Assembly (NCBI GenBank): GCA_964057225.1
Contig: OZ059895.1
Coordinates: 17,298,001 to 17,362,000 of the forward strand
Reading direction: 5' to 3'
Source of the DNA: Auanema rhodensis
Lineage: Eukaryota; Animalia; Nematoda
Length of the DNA: 64,000 nucleotides
Shown: one piece after another, positions 1-63,791 of the stretch
How positions within the stretch are numbered: position 1 is the first letter of the stretch
Layout of the letters: every line of letters starts with the position of its first letter
The notes under the pieces: model-generated
Databases searched by the model: none
What the model saw: the letters and a program-made list of their open reading frames with translations, nothing else
Told to the model about the DNA's origin: nothing
Made by a program: the position numbers and the translations under genes

Positions 1-8
1 CTTATCAA

Positions 9-63
9 GCCTCATTGGCTCAGGGGCAGAGCGTCTGTCTAGTAAACATTCCAGCTTGAGGCA
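9..63 (+). pseudogene. tRNA-Thr pseudogene, 17-bp deletion class (55 nt; representative)
   Basis: CTAGTAAACA|TTCCAGC lacks GAAGGTCGCTGGTTCGA (end of anticodon stem, variable loop, 5' T stem, most of the B box); often also carries A66T (CAGCTTGAGGC). Confidence 0.93.
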
Positions 64-1370: not shown

Positions 1371-1442
1371 GCCTCATTGGCTCAGGGGCAGAGCGTCTGT
1401 CTAGTAAACAGAAGGTCGCTGGTTCGATTCCAGCATGAGGCA
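1371..1442 (+). tRNA. tRNA-Thr(AGT), intact 72-nt copy (representative of many in the array)
   Basis: Cloverleaf folded by hand: acceptor GCCTCAT/ATGAGGC, D stem GCTC/GAGC, anticodon stem TCTGT/ACAGA with loop CT-AGT-AA, variable AGGTC, T stem GCTGG/CCAGC with loop TTCGATT, discriminator A, no encoded CCA. A box TGGCTCAGGGG, B box GGTTCGATTCC, followed by T4/T5 runs. Confidence 0.95.
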
Positions 1443-1458
1443 TCGTTTTAGACTTTTT
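1443..1458 (+). terminator. RNA Pol III oligo-dT terminator (representative)
   Basis: TCGTTTTAGACTTTTT directly after the tRNA; the alternative allele is TCTTTTTAGACTTTCT. Confidence 0.75.
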
Positions 1459-1614
1459 CAAACTATTTTGAGGGTTAATTCGTGCTTCTTGAAGCTTTTA
1501 CTTCAGGTTACATCTTCTCTTATTCATTCAAATGAAATATTTGAATTCAATATGTACAGGTATCCTTGAAAGTGGCGCAGAGATTATAATCGAGAAATGA
1601 AAACAATTTATCAA

Positions 1615-1686
1615 GCCTCATTGGCTCAGGGGCAGAGCGTCTGTCTAGTAAACAGAAGGTCGCTGGTTCGATTCCAGCATGAGGCA
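1615..1686 (+). tRNA. tRNA-Thr(AGT), intact copy
   Basis: Identical to 1371-1442, 244 bp downstream, followed by TCTTTTT. Confidence 0.93.
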
Positions 1687-1858
1687 TCTTTTTAGACTTT
1701 CTCAAACTATTTTTAGGATTCATTCGTGCTTCTTGAAGCTTTTACTTCAGGTTACATCTTCTCTTATTCATTCAAATGAAATGTTTCAATTGAATATGTA
1801 CACGTATCCTTGAAAGTGGTGCAGCGATTATAATCGAGAAATGAAAACAATTTATCAA

Positions 1859-1930
1859 GCCTCATTGGCTCAGGGGCAGAGCGTCTGTCTAGTAAACAGA
1901 AGGTCGCTGGTTCGATTCCAGCATGAGGCA
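1859..1930 (+). tRNA. tRNA-Thr(AGT), intact copy
   Basis: Identical 72-nt cloverleaf. Confidence 0.93.
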
Positions 1931-3986: not shown

Positions 3987-4039
3987 GCCTCATTGGCTCA
4001 GGGGCAGAGCGTCTGTCTAGTCGATTCCAGCATGAGGCA
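3987..4039 (+). pseudogene. tRNA-Thr pseudogene, 19-bp deletion class (53 nt; first occurrence)
   Basis: CTAGT|CGATTCCAGC lacks AAACAGAAGGTCGCTGGTT (3' anticodon arm through T55). Confidence 0.93.
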
Positions 4040-4826
4040 TCGTTTTAGACTTTCTCAAACTGTTTTGAGGATTCATTCGTGCTTCTTGAAGCTTTTACTT
4101 CAGGTTACATCTACTCTTATTCATTCGAATGAAATATTTTACTTCAATACGGAGCAGTATTGTTAAAAGTGACTAAGAGATTATTATCGACAAATGAAAA
4201 CAACTTATCAAGCCTCATTGGCTCAGGGGCAGAGCGTCTGTCTAGTAAACAGAAGGTCGCTGGTTCGATTCCAGCATGAGGCATCGTTTTAGACTTTTTC
4301 AAACTGTTTTGAGGATTAATTCGTGCTTCTTGAAGCTTTTACTTCAGGTTACATCTTCTCTTATTCATTCAAATGGAATGTTTCAATTGAATATGTACAC
4401 GCATTGTTGACAGTGACTAAGAGATTATTATCGACAAATGAAAATAACTTATCAAGCCTCATTGGCTCAGGGGCAGAGCGTCTGTCTAGTAAACATTCCA
4501 GCGTGAGGCATCTTTTTAGACTTTCTCAAACTATTTTGAGGATTAATTCGTGCTTCTTGAAGCTTTTACTTCAGGTTACATCTTCTCTTATTCATTCGAA
4601 TGAAATATTTTACTTCAATACGGAGCAGTATTGTTAAAAGTGACAAAGTGATTATTATCGACAAATGAAAACAACTTATCAAGCCTCATTGGCTCAGGGG
4701 CAGAGCGTCTGTCTAGTAAACATTCCAGCTTGAGGCATCTTTTTAGACTTTCTCAAACTATTTTTAGGATTCATTCGTGCTTCTCGAAGCTTTTACTTCA
4801 GGTTACATCTTCTCTTATTCATTCGA

Positions 4827-6290
4827 ATGAAAGAAAGGCTATCATCAATCTTCAAGATCCAACGCAGAGCTAGAATAGTGGTGAAAATATTAAAATTAAT
4901 ATTAAGTAGGCTAAAGAAAACACGATCTAAGTTGATAACAAACATGCCGTGGCTACACGATAGCGTGTCAGAAGAGGACGCAGTAGAAATAGTAATGATC
5001 CTGACACACCAGAAAAGATACAAAAGTGTAATAGACAATCCGAAATGGGATGATCTGGACATAATAGTTGACCAATACGGCATCAAGAGGTACAGAGGCA
5101 GAGCAGCCACTGATGACCTGATGAGCCTACCAGCGATACTCGCAGGAAAAGCTCAACTAACTCAGAACATGATACGGACTATTCATGAGAAGAATATGCA
5201 TGCGGGAAGAAACCTAACGCTGACTACGATGATAAGAAAATACTGGCCGTTACCTCTGAGACAAAGTATCAACACAATAATCAAAAAATGCATAAAGTGT
5301 AGAAGATTTAACGGTAGACCGTATAATTATCCAAAGTGCGGTACACTGCCAACAATAAGGACCGAGAAAGCCACGCCCTTTTCAAGGGTAGGCATAGACG
5401 GCATAGGACCATTTATGGTAGAGTACCCAAGTACTCCAGTAACACACAAAGCATATATACTTCTGATAACATGCTTAACTACAAGAGCTGTAAATTTAGA
5501 GTGTTTGCTAAATAATAGCACACCAGAATTAACACTGGCGCTAAGGAGACACTTTGCAAAATACAGAGTACCAGAAACCATGATCCTAGATAACGCCCAG
5601 ACATACAAAGGCGCACAGAAGTTCTTAGGAAACTTGAAACCAAACCAGATTCCGAAGCAACTGCATTACATGATAAACTCATTAAGAATAAAATGGAAAT
5701 TTATTACACCCTACTCACCGTGGCAGGGAGGGATCTACGAAAGATTAGTAGCTTCAGTAAAAAGCTGCTTGTACAAGGTAGCTACAAAAGCACATCACAA
5801 ATGGAAGATCAGGACATTAGAAACACTACTTATAGAGATAGCAAGACTGATCAACTCAAGACCACTATGTCCTATGAACGAGGATTCATTAGAATACATA
5901 TGCCCGATGGACCTTATCTTTCCTTATCCAGAAAGGACTACACCATTCGCAGATACAAAAAGGGAAAACACCCTCCAGGACGAATGGAACTCCATTAACC
6001 TGAGGTTAGAACAGTTCTGGATAATGTGGAAGGATCTGTATTTAACACATTTGAAAGAAAGGAATCGGATCGTCACTCAGTACAACAAAGGGTCCAGTCA
6101 AAATCCACGAATAGGAGAAATAGTTTTTTGCACTGATCAAAAAACTGATAAAACAAGATGGCACTTAGCCAAGATCGTGAAAATACATCCAGATGAACGA
6201 TCTCCACGCACGGTAGATCTTTTACATTCTGGCGGGAGGATCCTTCGGAGATCCGTACATACCATCATACCGTTAGAGATACAACAATAG
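4827..6290 (+). CDS. BEL/Pao integrase (3' part of pol; the ATG-AAA is supplied by the array)
   Basis: HHCC zinc domain (HEKNMHAG...CIKC), catalytic D-D-E (VGIDGIGP, ILDNA, PWQGGIYERLV), INSRPL, and a C-terminal DUF5641-like region (FWIMWKDLYL...GEIV...WHLAKI...RRSVHTIIPLE). Confidence 0.92.
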   Translation: MKERLSSIFKIQRRARIVVKILKLILSRLKKTRSKLITNMPWLHDSVSEEDAVEIVMILTHQKRYKSVIDNPKWDDLDIIVDQYGIKRYRGRAATDDLMSLPAILAGKAQLTQNMIRTIHEKNMHAGRNLTLTTMIRKYWPLPLRQSINTIIKKCIKCRRFNGRPYNYPKCGTLPTIRTEKATPFSRVGIDGIGPFMVEYPSTPVTHKAYILLITCLTTRAVNLECLLNNSTPELTLALRRHFAKYRVPETMILDNAQTYKGAQKFLGNLKPNQIPKQLHYMINSLRIKWKFITPYSPWQGGIYERLVASVKSCLYKVATKAHHKWKIRTLETLLIEIARLINSRPLCPMNEDSLEYICPMDLIFPYPERTTPFADTKRENTLQDEWNSINLRLEQFWIMWKDLYLTHLKERNRIVTQYNKGSSQNPRIGEIVFCTDQKTDKTRWHLAKIVKIHPDERSPRTVDLLHSGGRILRRSVHTIIPLEIQQ

Positions 6291-6374
6291 TATCAGCAGT
6301 TCATATATGCGATTGTTTGTTATCTTGCACAGTATTTCCTTATTCAACTTTGTTAAAAAATAACTATTTTAAGA

Positions 6375-6950
6375 ATGGAGTCAATTGATCTGGATTACGA
6401 TGCCATTCTAGATGATCTTGACAACACATTGATGAGCACTACTAACCTCCGAGTCCACGTTCCCGCTAATTCCATTCCGAAGACCACAAAACTATCGAAA
6501 GGTCCAACAGTTGCAGCTAACCACAAACACCGTGTTGAAGCAAAACAAAAAGACATGAGCATCGATCAAATCGAGATGAAACAAATAAAAAGAATGCTCG
6601 AGGATATAATTTTCACAATAAGAAGAAATGACAAGAGGCTTTGGACATATATAGAGAAGGAGGAAAAAAAAAGACACTGCCCCTTCTGCGAAGAATGCCA
6701 TCCAGCGGATAAATGCCGAGTAGTTAATACAATATCCCAGAGGCTACACTTTGCCCATGAAACTAAAAGGTGTTTAAAATGCTTGAAATCCAACCACGAG
6801 ACAGGGCAATGTCGGAGACCTACGCCGTGCAGGCATTGTAATTCTGGAGTGTGGGCCCACGCCTTATGCTGCTGCCCGGGACATGTAGCCGGACTCGAAA
6901 ACATGATGAGGAGAAATAAGCTCAAAAGAAAGATGGAAGATGGCCAATAG
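6375..6950 (+). CDS. 3' accessory ORF: helical/coiled-coil region + three Gag-type CCHC knuckles + basic tail
   Basis: CPFCEECHPADKC, CLKCLKSNHETGQC, CRHCNSGVWAHALC; ends RRNKLKRKMEDGQ. Confidence 0.8.
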   Translation: MESIDLDYDAILDDLDNTLMSTTNLRVHVPANSIPKTTKLSKGPTVAANHKHRVEAKQKDMSIDQIEMKQIKRMLEDIIFTIRRNDKRLWTYIEKEEKKRHCPFCEECHPADKCRVVNTISQRLHFAHETKRCLKCLKSNHETGQCRRPTPCRHCNSGVWAHALCCCPGHVAGLENMMRRNKLKRKMEDGQ

Positions 6951-7067
6951 TTGTTTTTTGTGTTTGTGATTTTTTTGGTTTTTTAGTTTTTGTTTGTTTT
7001 GTTTGTTTTTCTATACTCGTTAGTAAAAATCTTACCTTCTTTAGCTTTATCTTTTTTCCGCCCCCAG

Positions 7068-7331
7068 TGTCGATCGTAAGACCGAGATCAAAGATAGACT
7101 ACAACCACCAGGGTTTAAATACTCTGCAAGGATTTGGATGATAGGGCTCAGTGAGAAAGACTGCAGACACCCTAAGATTCCGTCAGACACGGAGACACAA
7201 CACTCTTTCAATTTAGATAAAAAGAGTAGTGCGAACACACAATCGAGATTCTCGACATCGAGAACGTACAAGATACAGTAAATTCTACGTATCACATAGA
7301 TCACGAATAACTAAAGGTAACTTATTCGACA
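7068..7331 (+). repeat. LTR of element 1 (264 bp)
   Basis: TG...CA termini with 6-bp inverted repeat TGTCGA/TCGACA, preceded by CCGCCCCCAG and directly followed by a TGG-initiated PBS. Only one copy is present, so the boundaries are inferred. Confidence 0.82.
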
Positions 7332-7342
7332 TGGCTCCCCGG
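7332..7342 (+). other. Primer-binding sequence complementary to the tRNA-Asp(GTC) 3' end
   Basis: TGGCTCCCCGG is the reverse complement of CCGGGGAG-CCA, the 3' end of nematode tRNA-Asp as I recall it. Confidence 0.8.
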
Positions 7343-10300
7343 AATATTTTACTTCAATAGGGAGCAGTATTGTTAAAAGTGACAAAGTGATTATTATCAA
7401 CAAATGAAAACAACTTATCAAGTCTCATTGGCTCAGGGGCAGAGCGTCTGTCTAGTAAACAGAAGGTCGCTGGTTCGATTCCAGCATGAGGCAGCGTTTT
7501 AGACTTTTTCAAACTATTTTGAGGATTAATTCGTGCTTCTTGAAGCTTTTACTTCAGGTTACATCTTCTCTTATTCATTCGAATGAAATATTTTACTTCA
7601 ATACGGAGCAGTATTGTTAAAAGTGACAAAGTGATTATTATCGACAAATGAAAACAACTTATCAAGCCTCATTGGCTCAGGGGCAGAGCGTCTGTCTAGT
7701 CGATTCCAGCATGAGGCATCGTTTTAGACTTTTTCAAACTATTTTGAGGATTAATTCGTGCTTCTTGAAGCTTTTACTTCAGGATACATCTTCTCTTATT
7801 CATTCGAAAGAAATATTTTACTTCAATACGGAGCAGTATTGTTAAAAGTGACAAAGTGATTATTATCGACAAATGAAAACAACTTATTAAGCCTCATTGG
7901 CTCAGGGGCAGAGCGTCTGTCTAGTAAACAGAAGGTCGCTGGTTCGATTCCAGCATGAGGCATCGTTTTAGACTTTTTCAAACTATTTTGAGGACTAATT
8001 CGTGCTTCTTGAAGCTTTTACTTCAGGTTACATCTTCTCTTATTCATTCAAATGAAATGTTTCAATTGAATATGTACACGCATTGTTGAAAGTGACTAAG
8101 AGATTATTATCGACAAATGAAAATAACTTATCAAGCCTCATTGGCTCAGGGGCAGAGCGTCTGTCTAGTAAACATTCCAGCTTGAGGCATCGTTTTAGAC
8201 TTTCTCAAACTATTTTGAGGATTAATTCGTGCTTCTAGAAGCTTTTACTTCAGGTTACATCTTCTCTTATTCATTCGAATGAAATATTTTACTTCAATAC
8301 GGAGCAGTATTGTTAAAAGTGACTAAGAGATTATTATCGACAAATGAAAACAACTTATCAAGCCTCATTGGCTCAGGGGCAGAGCGTCTGTCTAGTAAAC
8401 AGAAGGTCGCTGGTTCGATTCCAGCATGAGGCATCGTTTTAGACTTTTTCAAACTATTTTGAGGATTAATTCGTGCTTCTTGAAGCTTTTACTTCAAATT
8501 ACATCTTCTCTTATTCATTCAAATGAAATGTTTCAATTGAATATGTACACGCATTGTTGAAAGTGACTAAGAGATTATTAGCGACAAATGAAAATAACTT
8601 ATCAAGCCTCATTGGCTCAGGGGCAGAGCGTCTGTCTAGTAAACATTCCAGCTTGAGGCATCTTTTTAGACTTTCTCAAACTATTTTTAGGATTCATTCG
8701 TGCTTCTTGAAGCTTTTACTTCAGGTTACATCTACTCTTATTCATTCGAATGAAATATTTTACTTCAATACGGAGCAGTATTGTTAAAAGTGACAAAGTG
8801 ATTATTATCGACAAATGAAAACAACTTATTAAGCCTCATTGGCTCAGGGGCAGAGCGTCTGTCTAGTAAACAGAAGGTCGCTGGTTCGATTCCAGCATGA
8901 GGCATCGTTTTAGACTTTCTCAAACTATTTTTAGGATTCATTCGTGCTTCTTGAAGCTTTTACTTCAGGTTACATCTACTCTTATTCATTCGAATGAAAT
9001 ATTTTACTTCAATACGGAGCAGTATTGTTAAAAGTGACAAAGTGATTATTATCGACAAATGAAAACAACTTATCAAGCCTCATTGGCTCAGGGGCAGAGC
9101 GTCTGTCTAGTAAACATTCCAGCTTGAGGCATCTTTTTAGACTTTCTCAAACTATTTTGAGGTATAATTCGTGCTTCTTGAAGCTTTTACTTCAGGTTAC
9201 ATCTTCTTTTATTCATTCAAATGAAATCTTTATGTTCAATATGTACACGCATTGTTGAAAGTGACTAAGAGATTATTATGGACAAATGAAAATAACTTAT
9301 CAAGCCTCATTGGCTCAGGGGCAGAGCGTCTGTCTAGTAAACATTCCAGCTTGAGGCATCTTTTTAGACTTTCTCAAACTATTTTGAGGATTAATTCGTG
9401 CTTCTTGAAGCTTTTACTTCAGGTTACATCTTCTCTTATTCATTCGAATGAAATGTTTCAATTGAATATGTACACGCATTGTTGAAAGTGACTAAGAGAT
9501 TATCATCGAGAAATGAAAACAATTTATCAAGCCTCATTGGCTCAGGGGCAGAGCGTCTGTCTAGTAAACAGAAGGTCGCTGGTTCGATTCCAGCATGAGG
9601 CATCGTTTTAGACTTTTTCAAACTATTTTTAGGATTCATTCGTGCTTCTCGAAGCTTTTACTTCAGGTTACATCTTCTCTTATTCATTCGAAAGAAATAT
9701 TTTACTTCAATATGGAGCAGTATTGTTAAAAGTGACTAAGAGATTATAATCGAGAAATGAGAAAAACTTATTAAGCCTCATTGGCTCAGGGGCAGAGCGT
9801 CTGTCTAGTAAACAGAAGGTCGCTGGTTCGATTCCAGCATGAGGCATCATTTTAGAGTTTTTCAAACTGTTTGGAGGATACATTGGTGCTTCTTGAAACT
9901 TTTGCTTCAGATTATATCTTCTCTTATTCATTCAAATGAAATGTTTCAATTGAATATGTACACGCATAGTTGAAAGTGACTAAGAGATTATTATCGACAA
10001 ATGAAATCAATTTATCAAGCCTCATTGGCTCAGGGGCAGAGCGTCTGTCTAGTAAACATTCCAGCTTGAGGCATCTTTTTAGACTTTCTCAAACTATTTT
10101 TAGGATTTATTCGTGCTTCTCGAAGCTTTTACTTCAGGTTACATCTTCTCTTATTCATTCGATTGAAATATTTTACTTCAATACGGAGCAGTATTGTTAA
10201 AAGTGACAAAGTGATTATTATCGACAAATGAAAACAACTTATCAAGCCTCATTGGCTCAGGGGCAGAGCGTCTGTCTAGTAAATATTCCAGCATGAGGCA

Positions 10301-13300
10301 TCTTTTTAGAGTTTTTCAAACTGTTTGGAGGATACATTGGTGCTTCTTGAAACTTTTACTTCAGGTTACATCTTCTCTTATTCATTCAAATGAAATCTTT
10401 ATGTTCAATATGTACACGCATTGTTGAAAGTGACTAAGAGATTATTATGGACAAATAAAAATAACTTATCAAGCCTCATTGGCTCAGGGGCAGAGCGTCT
10501 GTCTAGTAAACATTCCAGCTTGAGGCATCTTTTTAGACTTTCTCAAACTATTTTGAGGATTAATTCGTGCTTCTTGAAGCTTTTACTTCAGGTTACATCT
10601 TCTCTTATTCATTCGAATGAAATGTTTCAATTGAATATGTACACGCATTGTTGAAAGTGACTAAGAGATTATCATCGAGAAATGAAAACAATTCATCAAG
10701 CCTCATTGGCTCAGGGGCAGAGCGTCTGTCTAGTAAACAGAAGGTCGCTGGTTCGATTCCAGCATGAGGCATCGTTTTAGACTTTTTCAAACTATTTTGA
10801 GGATTAATTCGTGCTTCTTGAAGCTTTTACTTCTGGTTACATCTTCTCTTATTCATTCGAATGAAATATTTTACTTCAATACGGAGCAGTATTGTTGAAA
10901 GTGACTAAGAGATTATTATCGACAAATGAAAATAACTTATCAAGCCTCATTGGCTCAGGGGCAGAGCGTCTGTCTAGTAAACATTCCAGCATGAGGCATC
11001 TTTTTAGACTTTCTCAAACTATTTTTAGGATTCATTCGTGCTTCTCGAAGTTTTTACTTCAGGTTACATCTTCTCTTATTCATTCGAATGAAATATTTTA
11101 CTTCAATACGGAGCTGTATTGTTAAAAGTGACTAAGAGATTATTATCGACAATTGAAAATAACTTATCAAGCCTCATTGGCTCAGGGGCAGAGCGTCTGT
11201 CTAGTCGATTCCAGCATGAGGTATCGTTTTAGACTTTTTCAAACTATTTTGAGGATTAATTCGTGCTTCTTGAAGCTTTTACTTCGGGTTACATCTTCTC
11301 TTATTCATTCAAATGAAATGTTTCAATTGAATATGTACACGCATTGTTGAAAGTGACTAAGAGATTATTAGCGACAAATGAAAATAACTTATCAAGCCTC
11401 ATTGGCTCAGGGGCAGAGCGTCTGTCTAGTAAACATTCCAGCATGAGGCATCGTTTTAGACTTTCTCAAACTATTTTTAGGATTCATTCGTGCTTCTTGA
11501 AGCTTTTACTTCAGGTTACATCTACTCTTATTCATTCGAATGAAATATTTTACTTCAATACGGAGTAGTATTGTTGAAAGTGACTAAGAGATTATTATCG
11601 ACAAATGAAAACAACTTATCAAGCCTCATTGGCTCAGGGGCAGAGCGTCTGTCTAGTAAACAGAAGGTCGCTGGTTCGATTCCAGCATGAGGCATCGTTT
11701 TAGACTTTTTCAAACTATTTTGAGGATTAATTCGTGCTTCTTGAAGCTTTTACTTCAGGTTACATCTTCTCTTATTCATTCAAATGAAATGTTTCAATTG
11801 AATATGTACACGCATTGTTGAAAGTGACTAAGAGATTATAATAGAGAAATGAGAATAACTTATCAAGCCTCATTGGCTCAGGGGCAGAGCGTCTGTCTAG
11901 TAAACATTCCAGCTTGAGGCATCTTTTTAGACTTTCTCAAACTATTTTGAGGATTAATTCGTGCTTCTTGAAGCTTTTACTTCAGGTTACATCTTCTCTT
12001 ATTCATTCGAATGAAATGTTTCAATTGAATATGTACACGCATTGTTGAAAGTGACTAAGAGATTATCATCGAGAAATGAAAACAATTTATCAAGCCTCAT
12101 TGGCTCAGGGGCAGAGCGTCTGTCTAGTAAACAGAAGGTCGCTGGTTCGATTCCAGCATGAGGCATCGTTTTAGACTTTTTCAAACTATTTTTAGGATTC
12201 ATTCGTGCTTCTCGAAGCTTTTACTTCAGGTTACATCTTCTCTTATTCATTCGAAAGAAATATTTTACTTCAATATGGAGCAGTATTGTTAAAAGTGACT
12301 AAGAGATTATAATCGACAAATGAGAATAACTTATTAAGCCTCATTGGCTCAGGGGCAGAGCGTCTGTCTAGTAAACAGAAGGTCGCTGTTTCGATTCCAG
12401 CATGAGGCATCTTTTTAGAGTTTTTCAAACTGTTTGGAGGATACATTGGTGCTTCTTGAAACTTTTGCTTCAGATTATATCTTCTCTTATTCATTCAAAT
12501 GAAATGTTTCAATTGAATATGTACACGCATAGTTGAAAGTGACTAAGAGATTATTATCGACAAATGAAATCAATTTATCAAGCCTCATTGGCTCAGGGGC
12601 AGAGCGTCTGTCTAGTAAACAGAAGGTCGCTGGTTCGATTCCAGCATGAGGCATCTTTTTAGAGTTTTTCAAACTGTTTGGAGGATACATTGGTGCTTCT
12701 TGAAACTTTTACTTCAGGTTACATCTTCTCTTATTCATTCAAATGAAATCTTTATGTTCAATATGTACACGCATTGTTGAAAGTGACTAAGAGATTATTA
12801 TGGACAAATGAAAATAACTTATCAAGCCTCATTGTCTCAGGGGCAGAGCGTCTGTCTAGTAAACAGAAGGTCGCTGGTTCGATTCCAGCATGAGGCATCG
12901 TTTTAGACTTTTTCAAACTATTTTGAGGATTAATTCGTGCTTCTTGAAGCTTTTACTTCAGGTTACATCTTCTCTTATTCATTCAAATGAAATGTTTCAA
13001 TTGAATATGTACACGCATTGTTGAAAGTGACTAAGAGATTATAATAGAGAAATGAGAATAACTTATCAAGCCTCATTGGCTCAGGGGCAGAGCGTCTGTC
13101 TAGTAAACATTCCAGCTTGAGGCATCTTTTTAGACTTTCTCAAACTATTTTGAGGATTAATTCGTGCTTCTTGAAGCTTTTACTTCAGGTTACATCTTCT
13201 CTTATTCATTCGAATGAAATGTTTCAATTGAATATGTACACGCATTGTTGAAAGTGACTAAGAGATTATCATCGAGAAATGAAAACAATTTATCAAGCCT

Positions 13301-28300: not shown

Positions 28301-28303
28301 AAA
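7343..28303 (+). repeat. tRNA-Thr(AGT)-based tandem array, segment 2
   Basis: Same unit, resuming in register after insertion 1; contains multi-unit duplications with periods such as 1203, 2805, 3556 and 6047 bp. Confidence 0.98.
7422..7493 (+). tRNA. tRNA-Thr(AGT), full-length copy with C2T change, 79 bp downstream of insertion 1
   Basis: GTCTCATTGG...ATGAGGCA; B box intact; U2:G71 wobble. Confidence 0.88.
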
Positions 28304-28565
28304 TGTGGCGTTATACCGCAAGTGTATAGTATGGTTGGAAATAAAACACGAAGCGAATATGTAGAAAAGGGTTTATTGATGAATTAACAAGACAAGCACG
28401 GAATAGAATCACTGACTGCGAACGTTTAAAATGTAAGACTCTCCTCCGTTGTTGGGCGGTCGTCTGAAATAAACTGTTACTTATGCCACATGTTAACACA
28501 TATGTTATGCATATGTGTTTTGATCTAATTACAAAGGAAGGAGATAAAGAGAGATAGAGATAGAT

Positions 28566-28614
<49 letters not shown>

Positions 28615-28700
28615 TAGAGAGATAGAGATAGAGAGAGGTATATATATATAGAGAGAGAGATAGAGATAACAAAAACAAAACCTACTCGCTTATCGCGACA
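28304..28700 (-). repeat. 3' LTR of element 2 (397 bp)
   Basis: As above; AATAAA on the minus strand at 28372-28377; preceded on the minus strand by GCCGGGAG. Confidence 0.96.
28541..28667. repeat. Compound (GA)n/(GATA)/(TA)n microsatellite inside the LTR (also at ~35324-35446)
   Basis: Directly visible; length differs between the two LTRs. Confidence 0.95.
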
Positions 28701-28708
28701 CTCCCGGC
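28701..28708 (-). other. Short PPT-like plus-strand primer site
   Basis: Minus strand GCCGGGAG abutting the 3' LTR TGT. Confidence 0.55.
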
Positions 28709-28722
28709 AAGAGTGTAAAGAC

Positions 28723-29217
28723 CTACATGGGTCTTTTACGTTTGGTCTCCCCACATACAACTCCATGGTGGGTCTCTGCTTTGCATCTATAACAAGATAC
28801 CTCGCATGTGTCCGGATGTTTCGGGTTCAAGCATCTGATACATAGTCCCAATTCATGTAGACGTAGAGTCCGCTCTGGAGACGAGGGATATATTGGGCAA
28901 GCTGCGGTTCGGTGACCATCAGCGGTCGGTTTGCTGCAAAAGATGCAGGAGGCCTTAGGCGCGGTTTGGACGGCTAGGTTGTCCAGTTTCAAATTCAGAG
29001 AGTGGTTAATGTTGTCCAGCCTCTCGGATAGGTGGTTCACAGCGCTGGCCAGGTTGTCATAGAACCTTTTTTCAAGGACCATTAGCTGTCTCAGGCTTGC
29101 AGTAGTATTGGGTAGATGCGAATACTTTTTGAGATCTTCCTCGAAGGAAGTGTTCTCAACTAAGTTAGACGTTATATCCTCCATTACTACTGAGTTGAGG
29201 CAAACTTGTTTTGCCAC
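28723..29217 (-). CDS. 3' accessory ORF: coiled-coil + three CCHC knuckles + basic tail
   Basis: Heptad-like LASAVNHLSERLDNINHSLNLKLDNL; CIFCSKPTADGHRTAAC, CIRCLNPKHPDTC, CYRCKAETHHGVVC; ends KRKRPM. Start codon uncertain (GTG or the downstream ATG). Confidence 0.8.
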   Translation of the reverse strand: MAKQVCLNSVVMEDITSNLVENTSFEEDLKKYSHLPNTTASLRQLMVLEKRFYDNLASAVNHLSERLDNINHSLNLKLDNLAVQTAPKASCIFCSKPTADGHRTAACPIYPSSPERTLRLHELGLCIRCLNPKHPDTCEVSCYRCKAETHHGVVCGETKRKRPM

Positions 29218-29499
29218 CTTATATACTGGTTGACGTCTGGTCTATGATATGTGTCTATTACGTCATTCAGAGATTAATATGATATCCTTCTGTTTTTGAT
29301 ATTATCCATTAAACGTCTGTTAACGAGTTATTATGTAATTCAATACTACAGATTAGATATCTTAAGTAAAACTAGCAGATTCGTGTTACTTTATTATTTC
29401 AGAAATTAATCCCTTCTCTTCTCTCCTTGGTTTATTTTATTTATGTGAATTTTAGTTTATACTTTGCTTTTGTTTATTCTACCTTTTATATCTTCTTTA

Positions 29500-30020
29500 T
29501 TAAAATCTCTGATCTCGAAGTGAGGCTGTGAAATTTCTGTATATTGCAATCATCCTTTTGGCCATCCATTGTATGGCTAATACTGTATTTAACAATACAA
29601 AGTATATCATTGGCGTGCATGCTACATATCCTATAGTAGCGGTAATGACAATGCCTGTCAGTATAATTCCCAACTTTGATAGGATTAGTTTGAAGATTGG
29701 AGCAAAGTCAATGGATTTGGATTCTGTACCCTCTTTTGAGTCACTTTCGTTTATTTCATCTATGCTTGCTATGTGGTGTAATGTTCCCTTAATAATGATC
29801 TCAATTTTTTTATTGTCGCATGTGGTATAGCAGAATTCATCAATTTGAGAATTTTCTCTTTTGATTGTTACTTCCGTGATTGCTACTTTTGGAGAACATT
29901 TTATCATAAATACTTCTCTTTGACATTCGATAGAAATCCATGTTTCTTCTGCCGTAAGGCATTGGAACTCTGCGAACGCACCCTGCCCGCAGGAGTAGCA
30001 ACCTGATAGTTTTGTGAGGG
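29500..30020 (-). CDS. C-terminal part of the phlebovirus Gc-like Env (after the frameshift) with TM anchor
   Basis: The shifted frame reads ALTKLSGCYSCGQGAFAEFQCLTAEETWISIECQREVF and runs into ORF 29500-29907 (MIKC...LGIILTGIVITATIGYVAC). GCYSCxxGA is the conserved motif of the phlebovirus G2 C-terminal domain. Confidence 0.8.
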
Positions 30021-33000
30021 CAGGTCAGAGCACAAGGCAGATTGTTGGAAAAAATGACTGAGTTTAAGAATAGAGATGAATCGACCGTAACAAAACTTTC
30101 GTCTAAATTTGTAGAGAATGATAACGTGTTATCTTTAGTTTTGAAGTTTCGGTTAGGAGATCTCATGTCTGATGTATTGGACATTTTTTCAAAAGTAGGG
30201 GTATCACACCTACATTTTATTTCATCAAATCTGTTAAATGTGCATGGGCAAAATGAGGATACTGTACAATTGTTGAAATGTTTTAATGCGGCTTCCTCTG
30301 TTGCACATTGAACTATTCCCTTTGTATGTATATCCGTAATGTACGTGTTTTCTTTCGAGGAAAAAAATAATTTTGTGTACATTTCTGGAGGAGGTTGTGA
30401 TTGTGATAACGTTGTTATATTGAAAAGTTGTTCACGATTTTTTGTGTAAGGTTGTAGAGTGATATTGTAATTGTTTTTCTGCTGGAGTAGTGTTGTTTCT
30501 ATATTGAATACAGTTTGGGTGAACCAACTATCACAAGTATAGACTTCGTATACTTCTTCTGTGATGGGTATATGCTCTATTTTGTAGAAAAGACATGGAT
30601 CTGTCCAAATCATAGGACATGTGTAAAATCTCGCCGACGATGTAAAACAACCGGATTGTGAAGGAAAGGTGTATGGTTGTAGTTCTTTGATTTTATTATA
30701 AAGCGAGTTAGTTTCACATGTTCCGTTACAGGAGCCTCGGTGACGGCATCGTAATATACTCAGTATGTTAACTGTTGTCTGTCTAGTGAAGTATCTAATA
30801 TTCTTTCGGCAGACATGTTCAGTATATAATTTCGTTATTTTGAATTGACCGATTTCATGATTAGAGTGTATTATGTTGATACATAACTGTTTTGTTCCGG
30901 GAGAGAATATTATATCTTGACTGTATTCGTGATAACAGACTAGGTTTTCATCGCATCTTATGTTAACGAAATGTTGAACATGGACATCGGAGCAAGAGCT
31001 GCAGCTTCCAATACAGAAAGCCAAGATGATTGCCAGTAACGATGGTAAAGATGATTGCGACCCTCTAGTAAAAAGAGAGAATTTTGGTGGCCTTCTTGTA
31101 TGGTTTAAAATAGGGTAAATATGCTTTTGAGAGGTTTCATGATCCACAATATTAACGTCTTGTGTGTTCGTTTGTTTTAATTGCAACGTATCATTGTGAT
31201 TTTCTGTTATTTTTTGATCAGTTTCATGATCTTCTTGTACGGAGATTGTTTTGTGTTTTGATTTCATGGTGTTGAGCATAATTTGAGTGTTTCTGGACCA
31301 TGTCTTATATCTATATTGGCTGTAACCCATGCGGCATAGACAAGAGACTATGAGGGTAACGGCCATAATGGTTATTATCACTGTCCATGTTGCCATTTCT
31401 GGGGAGCAATGAGGATTCGCTATAAGTTTTGTGGTGAACATGTTAGAGTCCTTGCAACTATTGATTTCTTCGGCATATGTCGAAGTTATTATAATCGGTA
31501 AGGAAAGCGCTTTCATTATGTCAGCTGCTACTTTTGGGTTTATTTTATTTTTTCTTTGGTGTGTAGCATAGGACATTTTTAGTGGGAAGGCTTTTATAAT
31601 TTCCTTCTCAGTGACATCATCTTGTTCTGTATGTTTTGCTGTTTTTACTGATGATTGTTTTGTCTTATTTTGAGGTCGATCATTTGTTGCATCCTCATTA
31701 TTCTCTGTTTCTGGAGTGTATGTATTATCATGTTGAGAGTTATCTGATTCATATGCAATATCGTAATTATGGCTAACATCATTTATGTCTTTATTCTCAT
31801 GTATTGTTTCATCTGTATGTTCTATAGGATGATCGAAAAGTATATTGTCTAATACAATATCAGTATGTGGGGTTCTATCTGTTGAGCTATTATTTTCTTG
31901 AACTATGTGTGAGTTGTCTTCTATGATTTTGTTGCTGTTAGTGTTGCATCTTATCTCTAGTGGATAGAGCTGATTGATGGATCGAATAATTATGTTTCCG
32001 TTGCTTGTTGCAACTTTTGCTGAACGTATGTTGCCATCTGAACTAGTGATTGTTTCAATGATGCGACCTAGTTTCCATGTTCCTCGTGGCAACATGTCGT
32101 TTTGTATCAATACTATTTCATCTGGTTGGGGGAAGATGTTTGTATGATTCTTTCTATGGTGTTTATGCTTAAATATATCTTTTAAGCTTGTTAGATATTC
32201 TTCTTGAAATTGTTTCCAAAATTTAGATGCTGAGTCTTCTGATAATTGAAGCGCTTCTAGCGCTTGCTCTGTTGATTGAATCGTTTGAATATCGCTATGG
32301 ATATCAAATATATGAGTATCCGCGTTGTTTTCAGGTAATGAAAACTTTATGGCTGATGTTAAAAAGTCAATTGGCCTTATGGGTAGAGTATCTAAATTAT
32401 CTGGGTGTGGATGGGTGAGTGGGCGTGTATTAATTATAGCTTCTATTTTTACAATGGCTGTGTGTAAGTCATCCAGGGACATTCGACTAGGAATGAAACA
32501 TTTTTTGAGTGAAGCTTTGGTTACACCTACTAAACGTTCCCAACATCCACCTTTCCAGGGTGATAATGGAGTGTTGTATATCCATTTAATTTTTTGTTGT
32601 GCTAGTGTGTTTAGTAAGCTTCTTTCGTTGTAATCCGATGTTTTTTCAAGGGTTTCTAATATTTTTGAGCTCAATATAAAGTTTCCTGCGCAGTCACTAC
32701 GCATAATTTCTGGAGTACCTCTGCGTGATATAAATCTAGTGAATGCATTCATAAAAGCAACTGTGGATTGATTGGTGACTACCTCTAAGTGAATTGCTCT
32801 AGTTGTCATGCATGTAAACAGACAGATATGGACTTTAGACCCATTTCGAAGGGTGAAGGGGCCCATAAGATCACACCCTGTTGAAAAGAATGCTCTTGTA
32901 AGAATCGTTCTATCTTTTGGTAGCGATGGCATATCTGGTAATTCATAAGGGTGTGATTGAAATCTTTTACATGTCACACAGTTTTTCAATGTTTGCTTAA

Positions 33001-34528
33001 TGACTCCGGTTATTTTTGGTATATAGAACTTTTGTCTGAGTTGAAGAAGCGTGAAATGTTTGCCTTGATGATTATTGTCTTTGTGTATTTTGTTGATCAG
33101 TTTTTTAACTATGGGGTTTGTTTTAAGAAGGAATATAGGGTTTTTCGTCTCTTCGGGAAGAAGAGTATTTTGTAAACGGCTTCTTACGCGATAAATATCC
33201 CATGTATCTTTGAAGAATTTTAGATTTATATGTCTTTGCTGTAAGTCATCAAGGCTCATATTAGATTGACTGTTACTGATCAAAATTTTTTCAATAATGT
33301 TGATGTCTTCAACAGTGTGCGTGTCTGTTGATGTGAGATGTTTTATTTTTTGCAACTTGTTGGCGTCGTTAGGATGGACTGTGAAAAACCATTTCTTGAA
33401 TAATTTCCCTACGGTTGTCATTGTTTTGATCACGTCATCATAGTTTTCACGAATGTTCCAAATATCATGGGTTGGAGGATTGTCTATGATTATGTGGACA
33501 ACATTGTGATGCTCCGATTTTAATTCTGCGTGTATGAATTTTAAGTCTTCATTAGATAGTTTAGGACACCGTATAGGTGTGGTTAACATGGGTTTTGTGA
33601 ACAGTTTTGTTACGATAAGGGATCCAGTTGAGGTTCCAATAATTACCTTAACATCTTCAACTTCATGTGTTTCTGATAATGCTCCAATGCCGTAAAAGGT
33701 TCTCTTCTGAGAACCAAGAATGGGCAGTCCTAATCTTGTAGATAGGTCCTTGGATATAAAAGATCTCATGGATCCTTCATCTATGAGCATGCGTACTTGC
33801 TCATATTTTTTACTATTGTGGTTGTATATGTTCGCCATTGCTGTTCGTAATATTACTTGACTTTCTTCAATATTATGTGTGTCAGCAATGTGATTAAGCG
33901 ATACTGGTGCTTTTTTTTTTTTTTCATTAAGTGCCTCAGTAGGGATTCGATTATTAGTGTCAGATTCTTGTTTATATTCTGTTGTTTTTTTATTCAATAA
34001 TTCTTCTGTGGTGATCAGTAAAGCCTGATCTTTTTTAATTGTGGGAGTTTCTTTATCTTTTTGGATATTTTGTACATTTTTTCTTCCTTGTGAGCACAAG
34101 GCGGAATTATGATCTCCTTGGCAATTGCGACATTTTTGTTTTCTGCATTCCGAACTTTTGTGTTTATCGGAAAAGCAAATCCAACAGATGGCCTTTCCGC
34201 GAATGCGGTACCTTCTTTTCTCTGGTGTTTCAAATGTGGTGCATTGATAAAAACGATGCTCGGATGAGTCGCAAAAGACACATGGCCAAGTTTGGGTTTT
34301 CCGTTGTTCTACGGAGTTTTCTTTATGTGCTACAGATGTGACATTCTCTTTGTGATTTCGAAACTTTTGTTCATGACTATTTCTTGTTTGTTCTCTTAGA
34401 ATAAACGAATAGATTTTGTGGTCTACAGCTGCCAGCATTTCTTTAGTAGAATGGTAGTTGTTTGGATGAATTAAAATGTCTTCCACGATGTGGTATGGGA
34501 ATTTGTTGAGAATCATCGCGGTACACAT
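29840..34528 (-). CDS. Gag(C-term)-protease-integrase-Env polyprotein lacking RT/RNase H; frameshift near 30020
   Basis: Gag knuckles CVFC..H..C, CWIC..H..C, CRNC..H..C; protease LIDEGSMRSFIS; integrase HKDNNHQG..CVTC, GCDLMGP, RSDCAG, PWKGGCWERLV; DUF5641-like region; TM WTVIITIMAVTLIVSCLC; signal-like LLAIILAFCIGSCSSC; Cys-rich Gc-like ectodomain. No YVDN/YxDD motif. Confidence 0.92.
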   Translation of the reverse strand: MCTAMILNKFPYHIVEDILIHPNNYHSTKEMLAAVDHKIYSFILREQTRNSHEQKFRNHKENVTSVAHKENSVEQRKTQTWPCVFCDSSEHRFYQCTTFETPEKRRYRIRGKAICWICFSDKHKSSECRKQKCRNCQGDHNSALCSQGRKNVQNIQKDKETPTIKKDQALLITTEELLNKKTTEYKQESDTNNRIPTEALNEKKKKAPVSLNHIADTHNIEESQVILRTAMANIYNHNSKKYEQVRMLIDEGSMRSFISKDLSTRLGLPILGSQKRTFYGIGALSETHEVEDVKVIIGTSTGSLIVTKLFTKPMLTTPIRCPKLSNEDLKFIHAELKSEHHNVVHIIIDNPPTHDIWNIRENYDDVIKTMTTVGKLFKKWFFTVHPNDANKLQKIKHLTSTDTHTVEDINIIEKILISNSQSNMSLDDLQQRHINLKFFKDTWDIYRVRSRLQNTLLPEETKNPIFLLKTNPIVKKLINKIHKDNNHQGKHFTLLQLRQKFYIPKITGVIKQTLKNCVTCKRFQSHPYELPDMPSLPKDRTILTRAFFSTGCDLMGPFTLRNGSKVHICLFTCMTTRAIHLEVVTNQSTVAFMNAFTRFISRRGTPEIMRSDCAGNFILSSKILETLEKTSDYNERSLLNTLAQQKIKWIYNTPLSPWKGGCWERLVGVTKASLKKCFIPSRMSLDDLHTAIVKIEAIINTRPLTHPHPDNLDTLPIRPIDFLTSAIKFSLPENNADTHIFDIHSDIQTIQSTEQALEALQLSEDSASKFWKQFQEEYLTSLKDIFKHKHHRKNHTNIFPQPDEIVLIQNDMLPRGTWKLGRIIETITSSDGNIRSAKVATSNGNIIIRSINQLYPLEIRCNTNSNKIIEDNSHIVQENNSSTDRTPHTDIVLDNILFDHPIEHTDETIHENKDINDVSHNYDIAYESDNSQHDNTYTPETENNEDATNDRPQNKTKQSSVKTAKHTEQDDVTEKEIIKAFPLKMSYATHQRKNKINPKVAADIMKALSLPIIITSTYAEEINSCKDSNMFTTKLIANPHCSPEMATWTVIITIMAVTLIVSCLCRMGYSQYRYKTWSRNTQIMLNTMKSKHKTISVQEDHETDQKITENHNDTLQLKQTNTQDVNIVDHETSQKHIYPILNHTRRPPKFSLFTRGSQSSLPSLLAIILAFCIGSCSSCSDVHVQHFVNIRCDENLVCYHEYSQDIIFSPGTKQLCINIIHSNHEIGQFKITKLYTEHVCRKNIRYFTRQTTVNILSILRCRHRGSCNGTCETNSLYNKIKELQPYTFPSQSGCFTSSARFYTCPMIWTDPCLFYKIEHIPITEEVYEVYTCDSWFTQTVFNIETTLLQQKNNYNITLQPYTKNREQLFNITTLSQSQPPPEMYTKLFFSSKENTYITDIHTKGIVQCATEEAALKHFNNCTVSSFCPCTFNRFDEIKCRCDTPTFEKMSNTSDMRSPNRNFKTKDNTLSFSTNLDESFVTVDSSLFLNSVIFSNNLPCALTCPHKTIRLLLLRAGCVRRVPMPYGRRNMDFYRMSKRSIYDKMFSKSSNHGSNNQKRKFSN

Positions 34529-34797
34529 TTCGCGGGATACTGTAGCTCCAGCGTTTTGTCTGATGCTTCGTAAAATTTTTGGAATTTTTTCTCGTTATCT
34601 TGATGATTTTTCAACGATTCTTTGAATTGGTGTTGGACTTTTGTCCAGCGAATGATGAGGCAAGAGAGGGTTTCCTCTTCTTCCTCAGTGTGGAAGTCGC
34701 AATCTACCAGAATACCAGGAAGGTCCTTCACTTCCATCTCGTATCGTGTAAGTAATTCTCCGAGAAACTGGTTAAAATTTTTAGATATGATTGACAA
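34513..34797 (-). pseudogene. Probable N-terminal Gag fragment, out of frame with the main ORF
   Basis: Helical 94-aa ORF between the PBS and the main ORF, overlapping it in another frame; no recognisable Pao capsid (DUF1759-like) region between the two. Confidence 0.5.
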
Positions 34798-35071
34798 AAA
34801 GGAGTGACATTTTTGTCGTAGATGTAGGAATAATGCTTATATTCCTTTTACTTTCTCTTTTTTTTGTTTGTTTGGTGATCACAGTATATGTGATAGTGAA
34901 TCTCTGTTTCTGTCTGCAGAGTTTGCTTATGGTTCAAGTCTTTTTGGTGTGACTTGACGTGGACTAATGGTTGCCACGATTTCTATTAAGTATGTTTTTT
35001 GCTCAAACACGCTTGGTTTGAGCTGTATCTCACCTGCCACGCGGGACTTGAAGCGGCTAAGATCTGAACTA

Positions 35072-35083
35072 GCCGATGCACCA
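35072..35083 (-). other. Primer-binding site, tRNA-Gly(GCC) type
   Basis: Minus strand TGGTGCATCGGC, 3 nt inside the 5' LTR; complementary to ...CGATGCA-CCA of tRNA-Gly(GCC). Confidence 0.82.
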
Positions 35084-35086
35084 ATT

Positions 35087-35342
35087 TGTGGCGTTATACC
35101 GCAAGTGTATAGTATGGTTGGAAATAAAACACAAAGCGAATATGTAGAAAAGGGTTTATTGATGAATTAACAAGACAAGCACGGAATAGAATCACTGACT
35201 GCGAACGTTAAAAATGTAAGACTGTCCTCCGTTGTTGGGCGGTCGTCTGAAATAAACTGTTACTTATGCCACATGTTAACACATATGTTATGCATATGTG
35301 TTTTGATCTAATTACAAAGGAAGGAGATAAAGAGAGATAGAT

Positions 35343-35393
<51 letters not shown>

Positions 35394-35479
35394 TAGAGAG
35401 AGAGAGATAGAGAGAGGTATATATATATAGAGAGAGAGATAGAGATAACAAAAACAAAACCTACTCGCTTATCGCGACA
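35087..35479 (-). repeat. 5' LTR of element 2 (393 bp)
   Basis: Direct repeat of 28304-28700; minus-strand termini TGTCGCG...CGCCACA; AATAAA on the minus strand at 35155-35160; (GA)n/(TA)n microsatellite. Confidence 0.96.
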
Positions 35480-35561
35480 TGAAATATTTTACTTCAATAC
35501 GGAGCAGTATTGTTAAAAGTGACAAAGTGATTATTATCGACAAATGAAAACAACTTATTAA

Positions 35562-35633
35562 GCCTCATTGGCTCAGGGGCAGAGCGTCTGTCTAGTAAAC
35601 AGAAGGTCGCTGGTTCGATTCCAGCATGAGGCA
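35562..35633 (+). tRNA. tRNA-Thr(AGT), intact copy 82 bp downstream of insertion 2
   Basis: Complete 72-nt cloverleaf with A and B boxes. Confidence 0.93.
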
Positions 35634-63600: not shown

Positions 63601-63791
63601 TCGATTCCAGCATGAGGCATCGTTTTAGACTTTCTCAAACTATTTTTAGGATTCATTCGTGCTTCTCAAAGCTTTTACTTCAGGTTACATCTTCTCTTAT
63701 TCATTCGAATGAAATATTTTACTTCAATACGGAGCAGTATTGTTAAAAGTGACAAAATGATTATTATCGACAAATGAAAACAACTTATCAA

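What the first reader, a model, noticed from the sequence alone, without database searches (positions are those of the whole stretch)
4818..35633. Two unrelated BEL/Pao elements inserted at the same base of the repeat unit, ~80 bp upstream of intact tRNA genes: candidate tRNA-gene-targeted Belpaoviridae
Seen: both left junctions fall exactly after ...CATTCGAATGAAA (4832 and 28303). The elements have different LTRs, different primers (Asp vs Gly) and opposite orientations, so they are independent events. The next tRNA starts 79 bp (7422) and 82 bp (35562) downstream. Both of those tRNAs are full-length, B-box-containing copies, although more than half of the units appear to be deletion forms. 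Known: Pol III-gene-targeted integration is established for Ty1, Ty3 and Dictyostelium DGLT-A/TRE elements; I know of no such report for BEL/Pao. Inference: a tethering mechanism (TFIIIB/TFIIIC/Pol III or a phased nucleosome) or a sequence preference guides these elements into the tRNA array. With n=2 this is suggestive only, and insertion 1 is not a normal integrase product.
Basis: partly seen in the sequence, partly recalled or inferred. Interest (0 to 1): 0.9.

Follow-up and report, generated by a model that had tools for sequence, protein, structure and literature searches.

The report
Two retroelement insertions, same tRNA-array spot
Two unrelated BEL/Pao virus-like elements interrupt a huge tRNA-Thr gene array at the same 5 bp of the repeat unit, but only one was inserted by an integrase, and two events cannot show that tRNA genes are targeted.

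Summary
The window is one tRNA-Thr(AGT) tandem array of 233 units: 92 intact genes and 141 units with a 17- or 19-nt deletion that removes half the B box. Only two things interrupt it.

- **E2 (28304-35479, minus strand)** is a normal integrase product. It has 393/397-bp LTRs about 99% identical, TG..CA ends, a 5-bp duplication (TGAAA) and a primer site. It is an Atlas/Cer13-like belpaovirus with a phlebovirus Gc-like env, and it has lost RT/RNase H.
- **E2's target and E1 (4833-7344, plus strand).** E1 is a 3' fragment: integrase part of pol, a small zinc-knuckle ORF, one LTR, then 11 nt of primer site. It has no second LTR and no duplication. This is the structure of an unfinished reverse-transcription intermediate joined into a chromosome break. 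That break lies at the 3' edge of the 5 bp that E2 duplicated.

Two random array positions share their unit phase with P = 0.004 (exact) to 0.045 (within 5 bp), judged post hoc. Closeness to a tRNA gene is uninformative, because no array position lies more than about 170 bp from a tRNA-type segment. A local hot spot is plausible.

The parts
1..4832 (+). tRNA-Thr(AGT) tandem array, left part (units of 244/227/225/226 bp)
4833..7344 (+). E1: 2512-bp 3' fragment of a BEL/Pao element. It has no 5' LTR and no target duplication. The last two bases (AA) may belong to the target.
4833..6290 (+). E1 pol fragment, 5'-truncated: integrase zinc-binding domain, catalytic core and DUF5641. The retained part is open throughout.
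6375..6950 (+). E1 ORF2, 191 aa, intact. Its C-terminal half matches the zinc-knuckle (nucleocapsid) part of BEL/Pao Gag, but it lies downstream of pol.
7068..7331 (+). E1 single LTR, ending in ..CA at 7331. The start is inferred at 7068 from a 6-bp terminal inverted repeat and a start resembling E2's LTR. An alternative start is 6952, after a purine-rich run. One copy cannot settle this.
7332..7342 (+). E1 primer-binding-site remnant (begins TGG) directly after the only LTR. An LTR followed by primer-site bases on the 3' side exists only in reverse-transcription intermediates.
   Evidence: PMC11372161
7422..7493 (+). Intact tRNA-Thr gene downstream of E1 (one acceptor-stem C>T change; Rfam 64.5 bits)
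7345..28303 (+). tRNA-Thr array between the two elements
28299..28303 (.). Target-site duplication of E2, left copy (TGAAA)
28304..35479 (-). E2: 7176-bp LTR element of BEL/Pao (Atlas/Cer13-like) type, an internally deleted copy
28304..28700 (-). E2 3' LTR in element sense, 397 bp, TG..CA, containing an (AG)n microsatellite
29500..34797 (-). E2 gag-pol-env coding region, given as one broken gene. It contains Gag zinc knuckle, protease-like stretch, integrase and phlebovirus Gc-like env. It holds a 1562-residue open frame. RT/RNase H are lost by one large in-frame deletion. Env has at least one frameshift. The Gag N-terminal domain is not detectable.
31958..33109 (-). E2 integrase domains (H2C2 zinc-binding domain, core, DUF5641)
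29581..30994 (-). E2 env-like region: Phlebovirus_G2 fusion domain (E=4.7e-41) and a weak G2 C-terminal domain match. Sequence match to PDB 7a4a; I take that entry to be the Atlas virus Gc of PMC9094657, since the tool names it only an integrase-domain protein.
35072..35083 (-). E2 primer-binding site (begins TGG), 3 nt inside the 5' LTR
35087..35479 (-). E2 5' LTR in element sense, 393 bp. It differs from the other LTR by 4 substitutions plus microsatellite length.
35480..35484 (.). Target-site duplication of E2, right copy (TGAAA)
35562..35633 (+). Intact tRNA-Thr gene downstream of E2 (Rfam 69.2 bits)
35485..64000 (+). tRNA-Thr array, right part, running off the window

Best explanation
Two independent events of different mechanism hit one spot in the spacer of a large tRNA-Thr gene array that is probably functional.

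E2 is an ordinary integrase-made insertion of an Atlas/Cer13-like belpaovirus copy. This copy lacks RT/RNase H, so it was either made with enzymes supplied by another copy or lost them after insertion.

E1 is not an integration. Its structure (end of pol, a 3' ORF, one LTR, 11 nt of primer site) is that of a half-finished reverse-transcription intermediate: a minus strand extended about 2.2 kb past the LTR, plus the plus-strand strong-stop DNA that copies the primer. The cell's end-joining repair pasted it into a double-strand break. That break lay at the 3' edge of the 5 bp cut by E2's integrase.

The shared position is most likely a local property of that point in the spacer: exposed DNA in regularly phased chromatin, a break-prone point, or a favoured sequence. 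A tether to the Pol III machinery has not been demonstrated.

Shown: the anatomy, the independence of the two events, and the common phase. Inferred: cDNA capture for E1, and the existence of a hot spot. Unknown: its basis.
For: E2 anatomy:
- LTR pair, TG..CA ends, 5-bp duplication and primer site.
- BEL/Pao integrase. Its relatives carry PF05380, PF05585 and PF03564.
- Env matches Phlebovirus_G2 and PDB 7a4a. PMC9094657 describes the Atlas virus Gc.
- RT/RNase H is absent from Pfam scans and from alignments to six full-length relatives.

E1 anatomy:
- A single LTR followed by primer-site bases, no direct repeat of 20 nt or more, no duplication, and the array resuming in register.

Precedent for E1:
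- In yeast, the Ty1 3' LTR region is the hot spot among fragments inserted at chromosome breaks. 40 of 56 such inserts carried nucleotides found only in cDNA intermediates (PMC11372161).

Common phase:
- Chance probability is 0.004-0.045.
- Both sites have the exact 13-mer, a deleted unit upstream and an intact gene downstream. That class holds 41 of 232 units.
- The most variable block of the unit (columns 169-192, two haplotypes) starts just 3' of the site. Three units have the site itself rearranged. This fits a break- or repair-prone point.

Array function:
- tRNA columns are 20 times less variable than the spacer, 0.34% against 6.6%.
Against: - There are only two events, and the coincidence was noticed post hoc, so chance is not excluded.
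- The 14-bp palindrome at the site gives no significant hairpin (-2 kcal/mol, z = -0.23), so no structural reason for fragility was found.
- No chromatin or expression data exist for this array.
- The variable block beside the site may be one old variant spread by array amplification rather than repeated breakage.
- E1's LTR start, and therefore its exact anatomy, rests on a single copy.
Confidence: 0.5

Rival explanations
1. Pure coincidence. Large neutral arrays collect insertions, and two of them happen to share a phase.
For: - n=2, and the pattern was selected post hoc by a reader scanning many windows.
- P is 0.02-0.045 once the few-bp ambiguity from the 5-bp duplication and the AA at E1's right junction is allowed.
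- 'Both downstream genes intact' has P about 0.16, since 39.8% of positions qualify.
- The two events used different mechanisms, so a common cause is not required.
Against: - Exact-phase P is 0.004, or 0.0006 with both downstream genes intact.
- The same 13-mer variant and the same arrangement of unit types occur at both sites.
Confidence: 0.3
2. BEL/Pao integrases are tethered to Pol III, TFIIIB or TFIIIC (or to the nucleosome they position) and integrate about 80 bp upstream of active tRNA genes.
For: - Both sites are 77-82 bp upstream of intact genes with a B box and downstream of deleted units.
- The intact genes look constrained, hence probably active.
- Ty1 uses upstream nucleosomal DNA in this way (PMC5911963).
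Against: - Only E2 is an integrase product. E1 needs a break, not an integrase.
- Every array position is near a tRNA-type segment, so proximity has no weight.
- There is no C-terminal extension on E1's integrase, and env follows directly in E2.
- The literature searched holds no report of such targeting for BEL/Pao or for any animal element.
- Two integrases only 29% identical would both need the trait.
Confidence: 0.12
3. E1 was once a full-length, integrase-made insertion at the same preferred target and was later truncated by deletion or rearrangement.
For: E1 lies at the same 5 bp as E2's target. Its retained pol part and ORF2 are open.
Against: - A deletion would have to start exactly at the element's first base and leave the array in register.
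- The right side has primer-site bases after the LTR and no TGAAA copy. A finished provirus never has that arrangement.
- Unit arithmetic shows a clean 2512-bp insertion into a 227-bp unit.
Confidence: 0.05

Closest known systems
Atlas virus / Cer13-type nematode belpaoviruses (Belpaoviridae; PMC9094657; bioRxiv 10.64898/2026.03.22.711591)
   Same: - E2 has LTRs of a few hundred bp.
- Integrase and env lie in one open frame.
- Env has a phlebovirus Gc-like class II fusion domain (Pfam PF07245, E=4.7e-41; PDB 7a4a, E=1.3e-8).
- Gag is very divergent.
   Different: - E2 has lost RT/RNase H, and its env is broken at least once. Atlas is intact at 9204 nt with identical 271-nt LTRs.
- E2's env has almost no sequence relatives in the large protein search (one hit, 25% identity).
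- Its integrase is at most 44% identical to anything found.
- Neither Atlas paper mentions tRNA or target sites (0 occurrences of these terms).
Ty1 cDNA fragments captured at chromosomal double-strand breaks in yeast (PMC11372161 and the work it cites)
   Same: E1 is a 3' LTR-containing fragment carrying bases that exist only in replication intermediates.
   Different: E1 belongs to a different element family (BEL/Pao) in an animal genome. It is a natural fixed event rather than an induced break. At about 2.5 kb it also includes coding sequence.
Pol III-gene-targeting retrotransposons (Ty1, Ty3, Tj1, DGLT-A, TRE5/TRE3; PMC5911963 Table 1)
   Same: The insertions lie upstream of tRNA genes. The distance of about -80 falls in the Ty1-type range of upstream nucleosomal DNA rather than the Ty3 or DGLT-A range.
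   Different: - All known cases are Ty1-copia, Ty3-gypsy or L1 elements of fungi and amoebae.
- They are supported by many insertions at different tRNA gene families and by protein contacts.
- Here there is one integrase event in one array, and none of those features was tested.

Membership tests
BEL/Pao LTR retrotransposon (Belpaoviridae): E2 | Two LTRs with TG..CA ends, a short (4-6 bp) target duplication, and a primer site next to the 5' LTR | tested here: met
   LTRs of 397 and 393 bp, about 99% identical. 5-bp TGAAA duplication. A primer site beginning TGG lies 3 nt from the LTR.
BEL/Pao LTR retrotransposon (Belpaoviridae): E2 | Pol of BEL/Pao type. The integrase has the H2C2 domain and DUF5641, and its relatives carry Peptidase_A17, DUF1758 and DUF1759. 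| tested here: met
   PF17921, PF00665 and PF18701 are found in E2. Of 149 relatives, the 120 best are listed, nearly all with PF05380, PF05585 or PF03564, at E down to 1.9e-84.
BEL/Pao LTR retrotransposon (Belpaoviridae): E2 | Reverse transcriptase and RNase H between protease and integrase | tested here: not met
   No RT or Peptidase_A17 match even at E<=5. Alignments to six full-length relatives skip roughly 650-730 of their residues. This copy is a deletion derivative. The family assignment rests on the other genes.
Atlas/Cer13-like env-bearing belpaoviruses: E2 | Phlebovirus Gc-like class II fusion protein encoded downstream of, and in frame with, integrase | tested here: met
   PF07245 at E=4.7e-41 in the same open frame as the integrase. 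PDB 7a4a at E=1.3e-8. No Gn-like match was found.
BEL/Pao LTR retrotransposon: E1 | BEL/Pao-type integrase | tested here: met
   PF17921 and PF18701 pass Pfam's cut-offs; the rve and rve_3 core matches fall below theirs. 29-31% identity over about 450 residues to full-length BEL/Pao polyproteins, E down to 4e-58.
BEL/Pao LTR retrotransposon: E1 | LTR pair and target duplication (a normal provirus) | tested here: not met
   No direct repeat of 20 nt or more within 4700-7450 apart from one 26-nt chance match. No duplication. The 5' part is absent.
Break-captured reverse-transcription intermediate (Ty1-type cDNA capture) | 3' LTR followed by primer-site bases, truncated internal end, no target duplication, little or no loss of target | tested here: met
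   The LTR ends at 7331, primer-site bases occupy 7332-7342, and the array resumes in register at 7345 with 0-2 bp of ambiguity. Precedent: PMC11372161.
Pol III-gene-targeting retrotransposon | Excess of insertions at a fixed distance from many different Pol III genes, independent of flanking sequence | not tested
This needs other genomic copies. The window holds one gene family only.
Pol III-gene-targeting retrotransposon | Insertion made by the element's own integration machinery | tested here: inconclusive
   Met for E2 (duplication, LTR ends). Not met for E1.
Pol III-gene-targeting retrotransposon | Contact between an element protein and Pol III, TFIIIB or TFIIIC | not testable with these tools
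   The only relevant observation is that neither integrase has a C-terminal extension beyond DUF5641.
Functional tRNA gene array | Cloverleaf with A and B boxes and a T-run terminator; gene more conserved than spacer | tested here: met
   92 ARAGORN calls, with Rfam scores of 61-69 bits. A TTTT run follows the gene. Variability is 0.34% in the gene against 6.6% in the spacer. Expression was not tested.

The most novel reading that the evidence does not exclude
Belpaoviruses of this (probably nematode) host have evolved position-specific integration about 80 bp upstream of active tRNA genes, through Pol III-phased chromatin or a direct tether. This would be the first Pol III-gene targeting by a BEL/Pao element and the first in an animal. 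The same exposed point would also be where breaks capture stray cDNA.
Probability: 0.1. Interest if true: 0.8.

Novelty: new member of a known kind. Interest (0 to 1): 0.4.

Why it matters
If the shared site reflects real targeting, it would extend Pol III-gene targeting to animals and to a third LTR-element family. So far this 'safe haven' strategy is known only from compact fungal and amoebal genomes.

As it stands, three things are of value:
- A clean natural example, in an animal genome, of a reverse-transcription intermediate captured at a chromosome break.
- A deletion derivative of an Atlas/Cer13-like env-bearing belpaovirus.
- A very large, apparently constrained tRNA-Thr gene array in which 60% of units are B-box-deleted.

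Tried and rejected
Tests that led nowhere:
- **Cruciform or fragile palindrome at the site.** The 14-bp palindrome folds no better than shuffles, so it gives no support.
- **Further insertions or solo LTRs in the window.** There are none; all other units have regular lengths.
- **Similarity between the two elements' LTRs or bodies.** None was found, apart from loosely similar first bases of the LTRs.
- **Gn-like domain upstream of E2's Gc.** No Pfam match.
- **Relatives of E2's env in the large protein search.** One weak hit only.
- **Literature.** No paper on BEL/Pao and tRNA targeting. No paper describing this tRNA-Thr array.
- **Host identity.** Not established. The best integrase identity is to Haemonchus, a nematode (44%). 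The env matches PDB 7a4a, which I take to be the hookworm Atlas virus Gc. Nothing suggests a human contig.
- **Primer assignments (Asp, Gly).** Not testable, because no such tRNA gene is in the window. Both sites begin with TGG, differ from each other, and do not match the array's tRNA-Thr 3' end beyond 6 nt.

Slips that I declare:
- The output of my script lists alignment bounds from which the position of E2's deletion could be read.
- My note records the bounds of E2's long open frame, one of which coincides with a break.


Full report
**What is in the window**

The whole 64 kb is a head-to-tail array of one tRNA-Thr(AGT) gene on the plus strand.
- ARAGORN finds 92 full-length genes. Tandem Repeats Finder gives periods of 244 and 227 bp.
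- Anchoring on the start of the gene gives 233 units: 244 bp x89, 227 x76, 225 x51, 226 x11, and single units of 224, 242 and 243 bp. Only two intervals are irregular, of 2739 and 7406 bp. These hold the two inserts, in a 227-bp and a 225-bp unit respectively.
- The short units are two deletion forms of the gene, lacking 17 or 19 nt including half of the B box. They do not reach the Rfam tRNA threshold. The full-length genes checked score 61-69 bits.
- Among the 89 units of 244 bp, the 72 gene columns are 20 times less variable than the spacer, 0.34% against 6.6% minor-base share. This argues that the intact copies are constrained genes, not just satellite DNA.

**Element 2 (28304-35479, coding strand minus)**

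- It has LTRs of 397 and 393 bp that differ by 4 substitutions and by the length of an internal (AG)n run.
- It has TG..CA ends and a 5-bp target duplication, TGAAA, at 28299-28303 and 35480-35484.
- A primer site beginning TGG lies 3 nt inside the 5' LTR.
- A 1562-residue open frame carries a Gag-type zinc knuckle, a weak aspartic-protease match, the integrase zinc-binding domain, the integrase core, DUF5641 and a Phlebovirus_G2 fusion domain at E=4.7e-41.
- The only sequence match among solved structures is 7a4a. The tool names that chain only an integrase-domain protein; I take it to be the Gc of the hookworm Atlas virus described in PMC9094657.
- Of 149 relatives in the large protein search, the 120 best are listed. 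Nearly all are BEL/Pao polyproteins carrying PF05380, PF05585 or PF03564. Most are 28-38% identical over the integrase, and the highest is 44%, to a Haemonchus protein.
- E2 is therefore an Atlas/Cer13-like belpaovirus, probably in a nematode.

- RT and RNase H are removed by one large in-frame deletion of roughly 650-730 residues relative to six full-length relatives.
- Env has at least one frameshift. A weak match to the G2 C-terminal domain lies in another frame.
- The usual Gag N-terminal domain is not detectable.

**Element 1 (4833-7344, coding strand plus)**

- It begins inside pol. The retained 487-codon frame is open and carries the integrase zinc-binding domain, core and DUF5641. It is 29-31% identical to full-length BEL/Pao polyproteins and 29% identical to E2's integrase.
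- An intact 191-codon ORF follows. Its C-terminal half matches the zinc-knuckle part of BEL/Pao Gag. That is an odd place for such a gene.
- Next come a T-rich stretch and one LTR ending ..CA at 7331. Its start is either 7068 or 6952, which one copy cannot settle.
- Directly after the LTR are 11 bases of a primer site, at 7332-7342.
- There is no second LTR and no target duplication.
- Unit arithmetic shows a clean 2512-bp insertion into a 227-bp unit, with the array resuming in register at 7345.
- An LTR followed on its 3' side by primer-site bases does not occur in a finished provirus. It does occur in the intermediate made of a partly extended minus strand and the plus-strand strong-stop DNA.
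- In yeast, exactly such Ty1 3' LTR fragments, carrying nucleotides present only in cDNA, are the commonest retroelement inserts at repaired double-strand breaks (PMC11372161).
- I therefore read E1 as a captured reverse-transcription intermediate, not an integration.

**The coincidence**

- Both inserts lie after column 167 of the unit, 95 bp past the previous tRNA position and 77 bp before the next gene. More exactly, E1's break is at the 3' edge of the 5 bp that E2 duplicated.
- Monte Carlo over all array positions gives P=0.004 for identical phase, 0.021 within 2 bp and 0.045 within 5 bp. The figures are 0.0006-0.007 if both next genes must also be intact.
- Both sites carry the exact 13-mer found in 112 of 232 units. 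Both have a deleted unit upstream and an intact gene downstream, a class of 41 of 232 units.
- The flanks of the two sites are 91-98% identical over 50-150 bp.
- The most variable block of the unit, columns 169-192 with two haplotypes, begins just 3' of the site. Three units have the site itself rearranged.
- The 14-bp palindrome at the site has no significant hairpin potential.

**What this does and does not show**

- The elements share no nucleotide similarity, so the events are independent. A local hot spot is a reasonable reading.
- Closeness to a tRNA gene is not evidence. Every position in the array is close to a tRNA-type segment, 39.8% of positions have an intact next unit, and 17.6% lie within 100 bp upstream of an intact gene.
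- Only one of the two events involved an integrase. A tether between integrase and Pol III, TFIIIB or TFIIIC can therefore explain at most E2.
- Neither integrase has an appended C-terminal module.

**Comparison with what is known**

- Known tRNA-targeting retrotransposons are Ty1-copia, Ty3-gypsy or L1 elements of fungi and amoebae (Table 1 of PMC5911963; PMC5006619).
- No paper in the library links BEL/Pao or Belpaoviridae with tRNA targeting.
- The Atlas virus papers do not mention tRNA or target sites (0 occurrences of these terms).

- I did not fetch other copies of either family from public collections. I also did not fetch further array stretches, whose only use would have been to bring in more insertions. 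The decisive distribution test is therefore open.
Queries were single open frames as they stand.
- Slips declared:
  - I recalled cellular tRNA 3' ends from memory in my reasoning, and they were never used.
  - The output and my note contain bounds from which two break positions in E2 could be read. They are not repeated here.

**Verdict**

- The family assignment and the independence of the two events are confirmed.
- E1 is re-interpreted as cDNA capture at a break.
- A local hot spot is plausible.
- Pol III-directed targeting is neither shown nor excluded; I put it at about 0.1.

Noticed in passing
window 29581-30994 (minus strand): E2 encodes a phlebovirus Gc-like class II fusion protein in the same open frame as its integrase, as in the hookworm Atlas virus and C. 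elegans Cer13. Its sequence has almost no relatives in the large protein search (one hit at 25% identity).
   Followed up: partly
window 28304-35479: E2 has nearly identical LTRs and a perfect target duplication, yet it lacks RT/RNase H through one in-frame deletion. Either it was copied with enzymes from another element, or the deletion came after insertion.
   Followed up: partly
window 6375-6950 (plus strand): E1 carries an intact 191-codon ORF downstream of pol. Its C-terminal half matches the Gag nucleocapsid zinc knuckles of BEL/Pao polyproteins (E down to 5e-11). A Gag-like accessory gene in the env position is unusual. It could also be a template-switch chimera.
   Followed up: partly
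window 28548-28666 and 35331-35445: An (AG)n microsatellite of about 115 bp sits inside each LTR of E2 and differs in length between the two LTRs.
   Followed up: no
whole window; columns 169-192 of the 244-bp unit: A 24-nt block immediately 3' of the shared insertion point exists as two very different haplotypes of equal length. Three units (starting 35566, 36035 and 36714) have the insertion-point motif itself rearranged. This is the most variable part of the unit.
   Followed up: partly
whole window: 60% of units are two recurrent deletion forms of the tRNA gene (17 or 19 nt lost, B box halved), interleaved with intact genes in higher-order patterns such as 244+227 = 471 bp. The intact genes are 20 times less variable than the spacers.
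   Followed up: partly
window 40871-40945, 41115-41189, 41359-41433, 45342-45416: ARAGORN calls four genes as 75 nt with the anticodon at position 34. In the three copies I read (40871, 41115, 45342), the difference lies in the bases just 5' of the gene (a changed first base or bases), not in an insertion inside it.
   Followed up: partly
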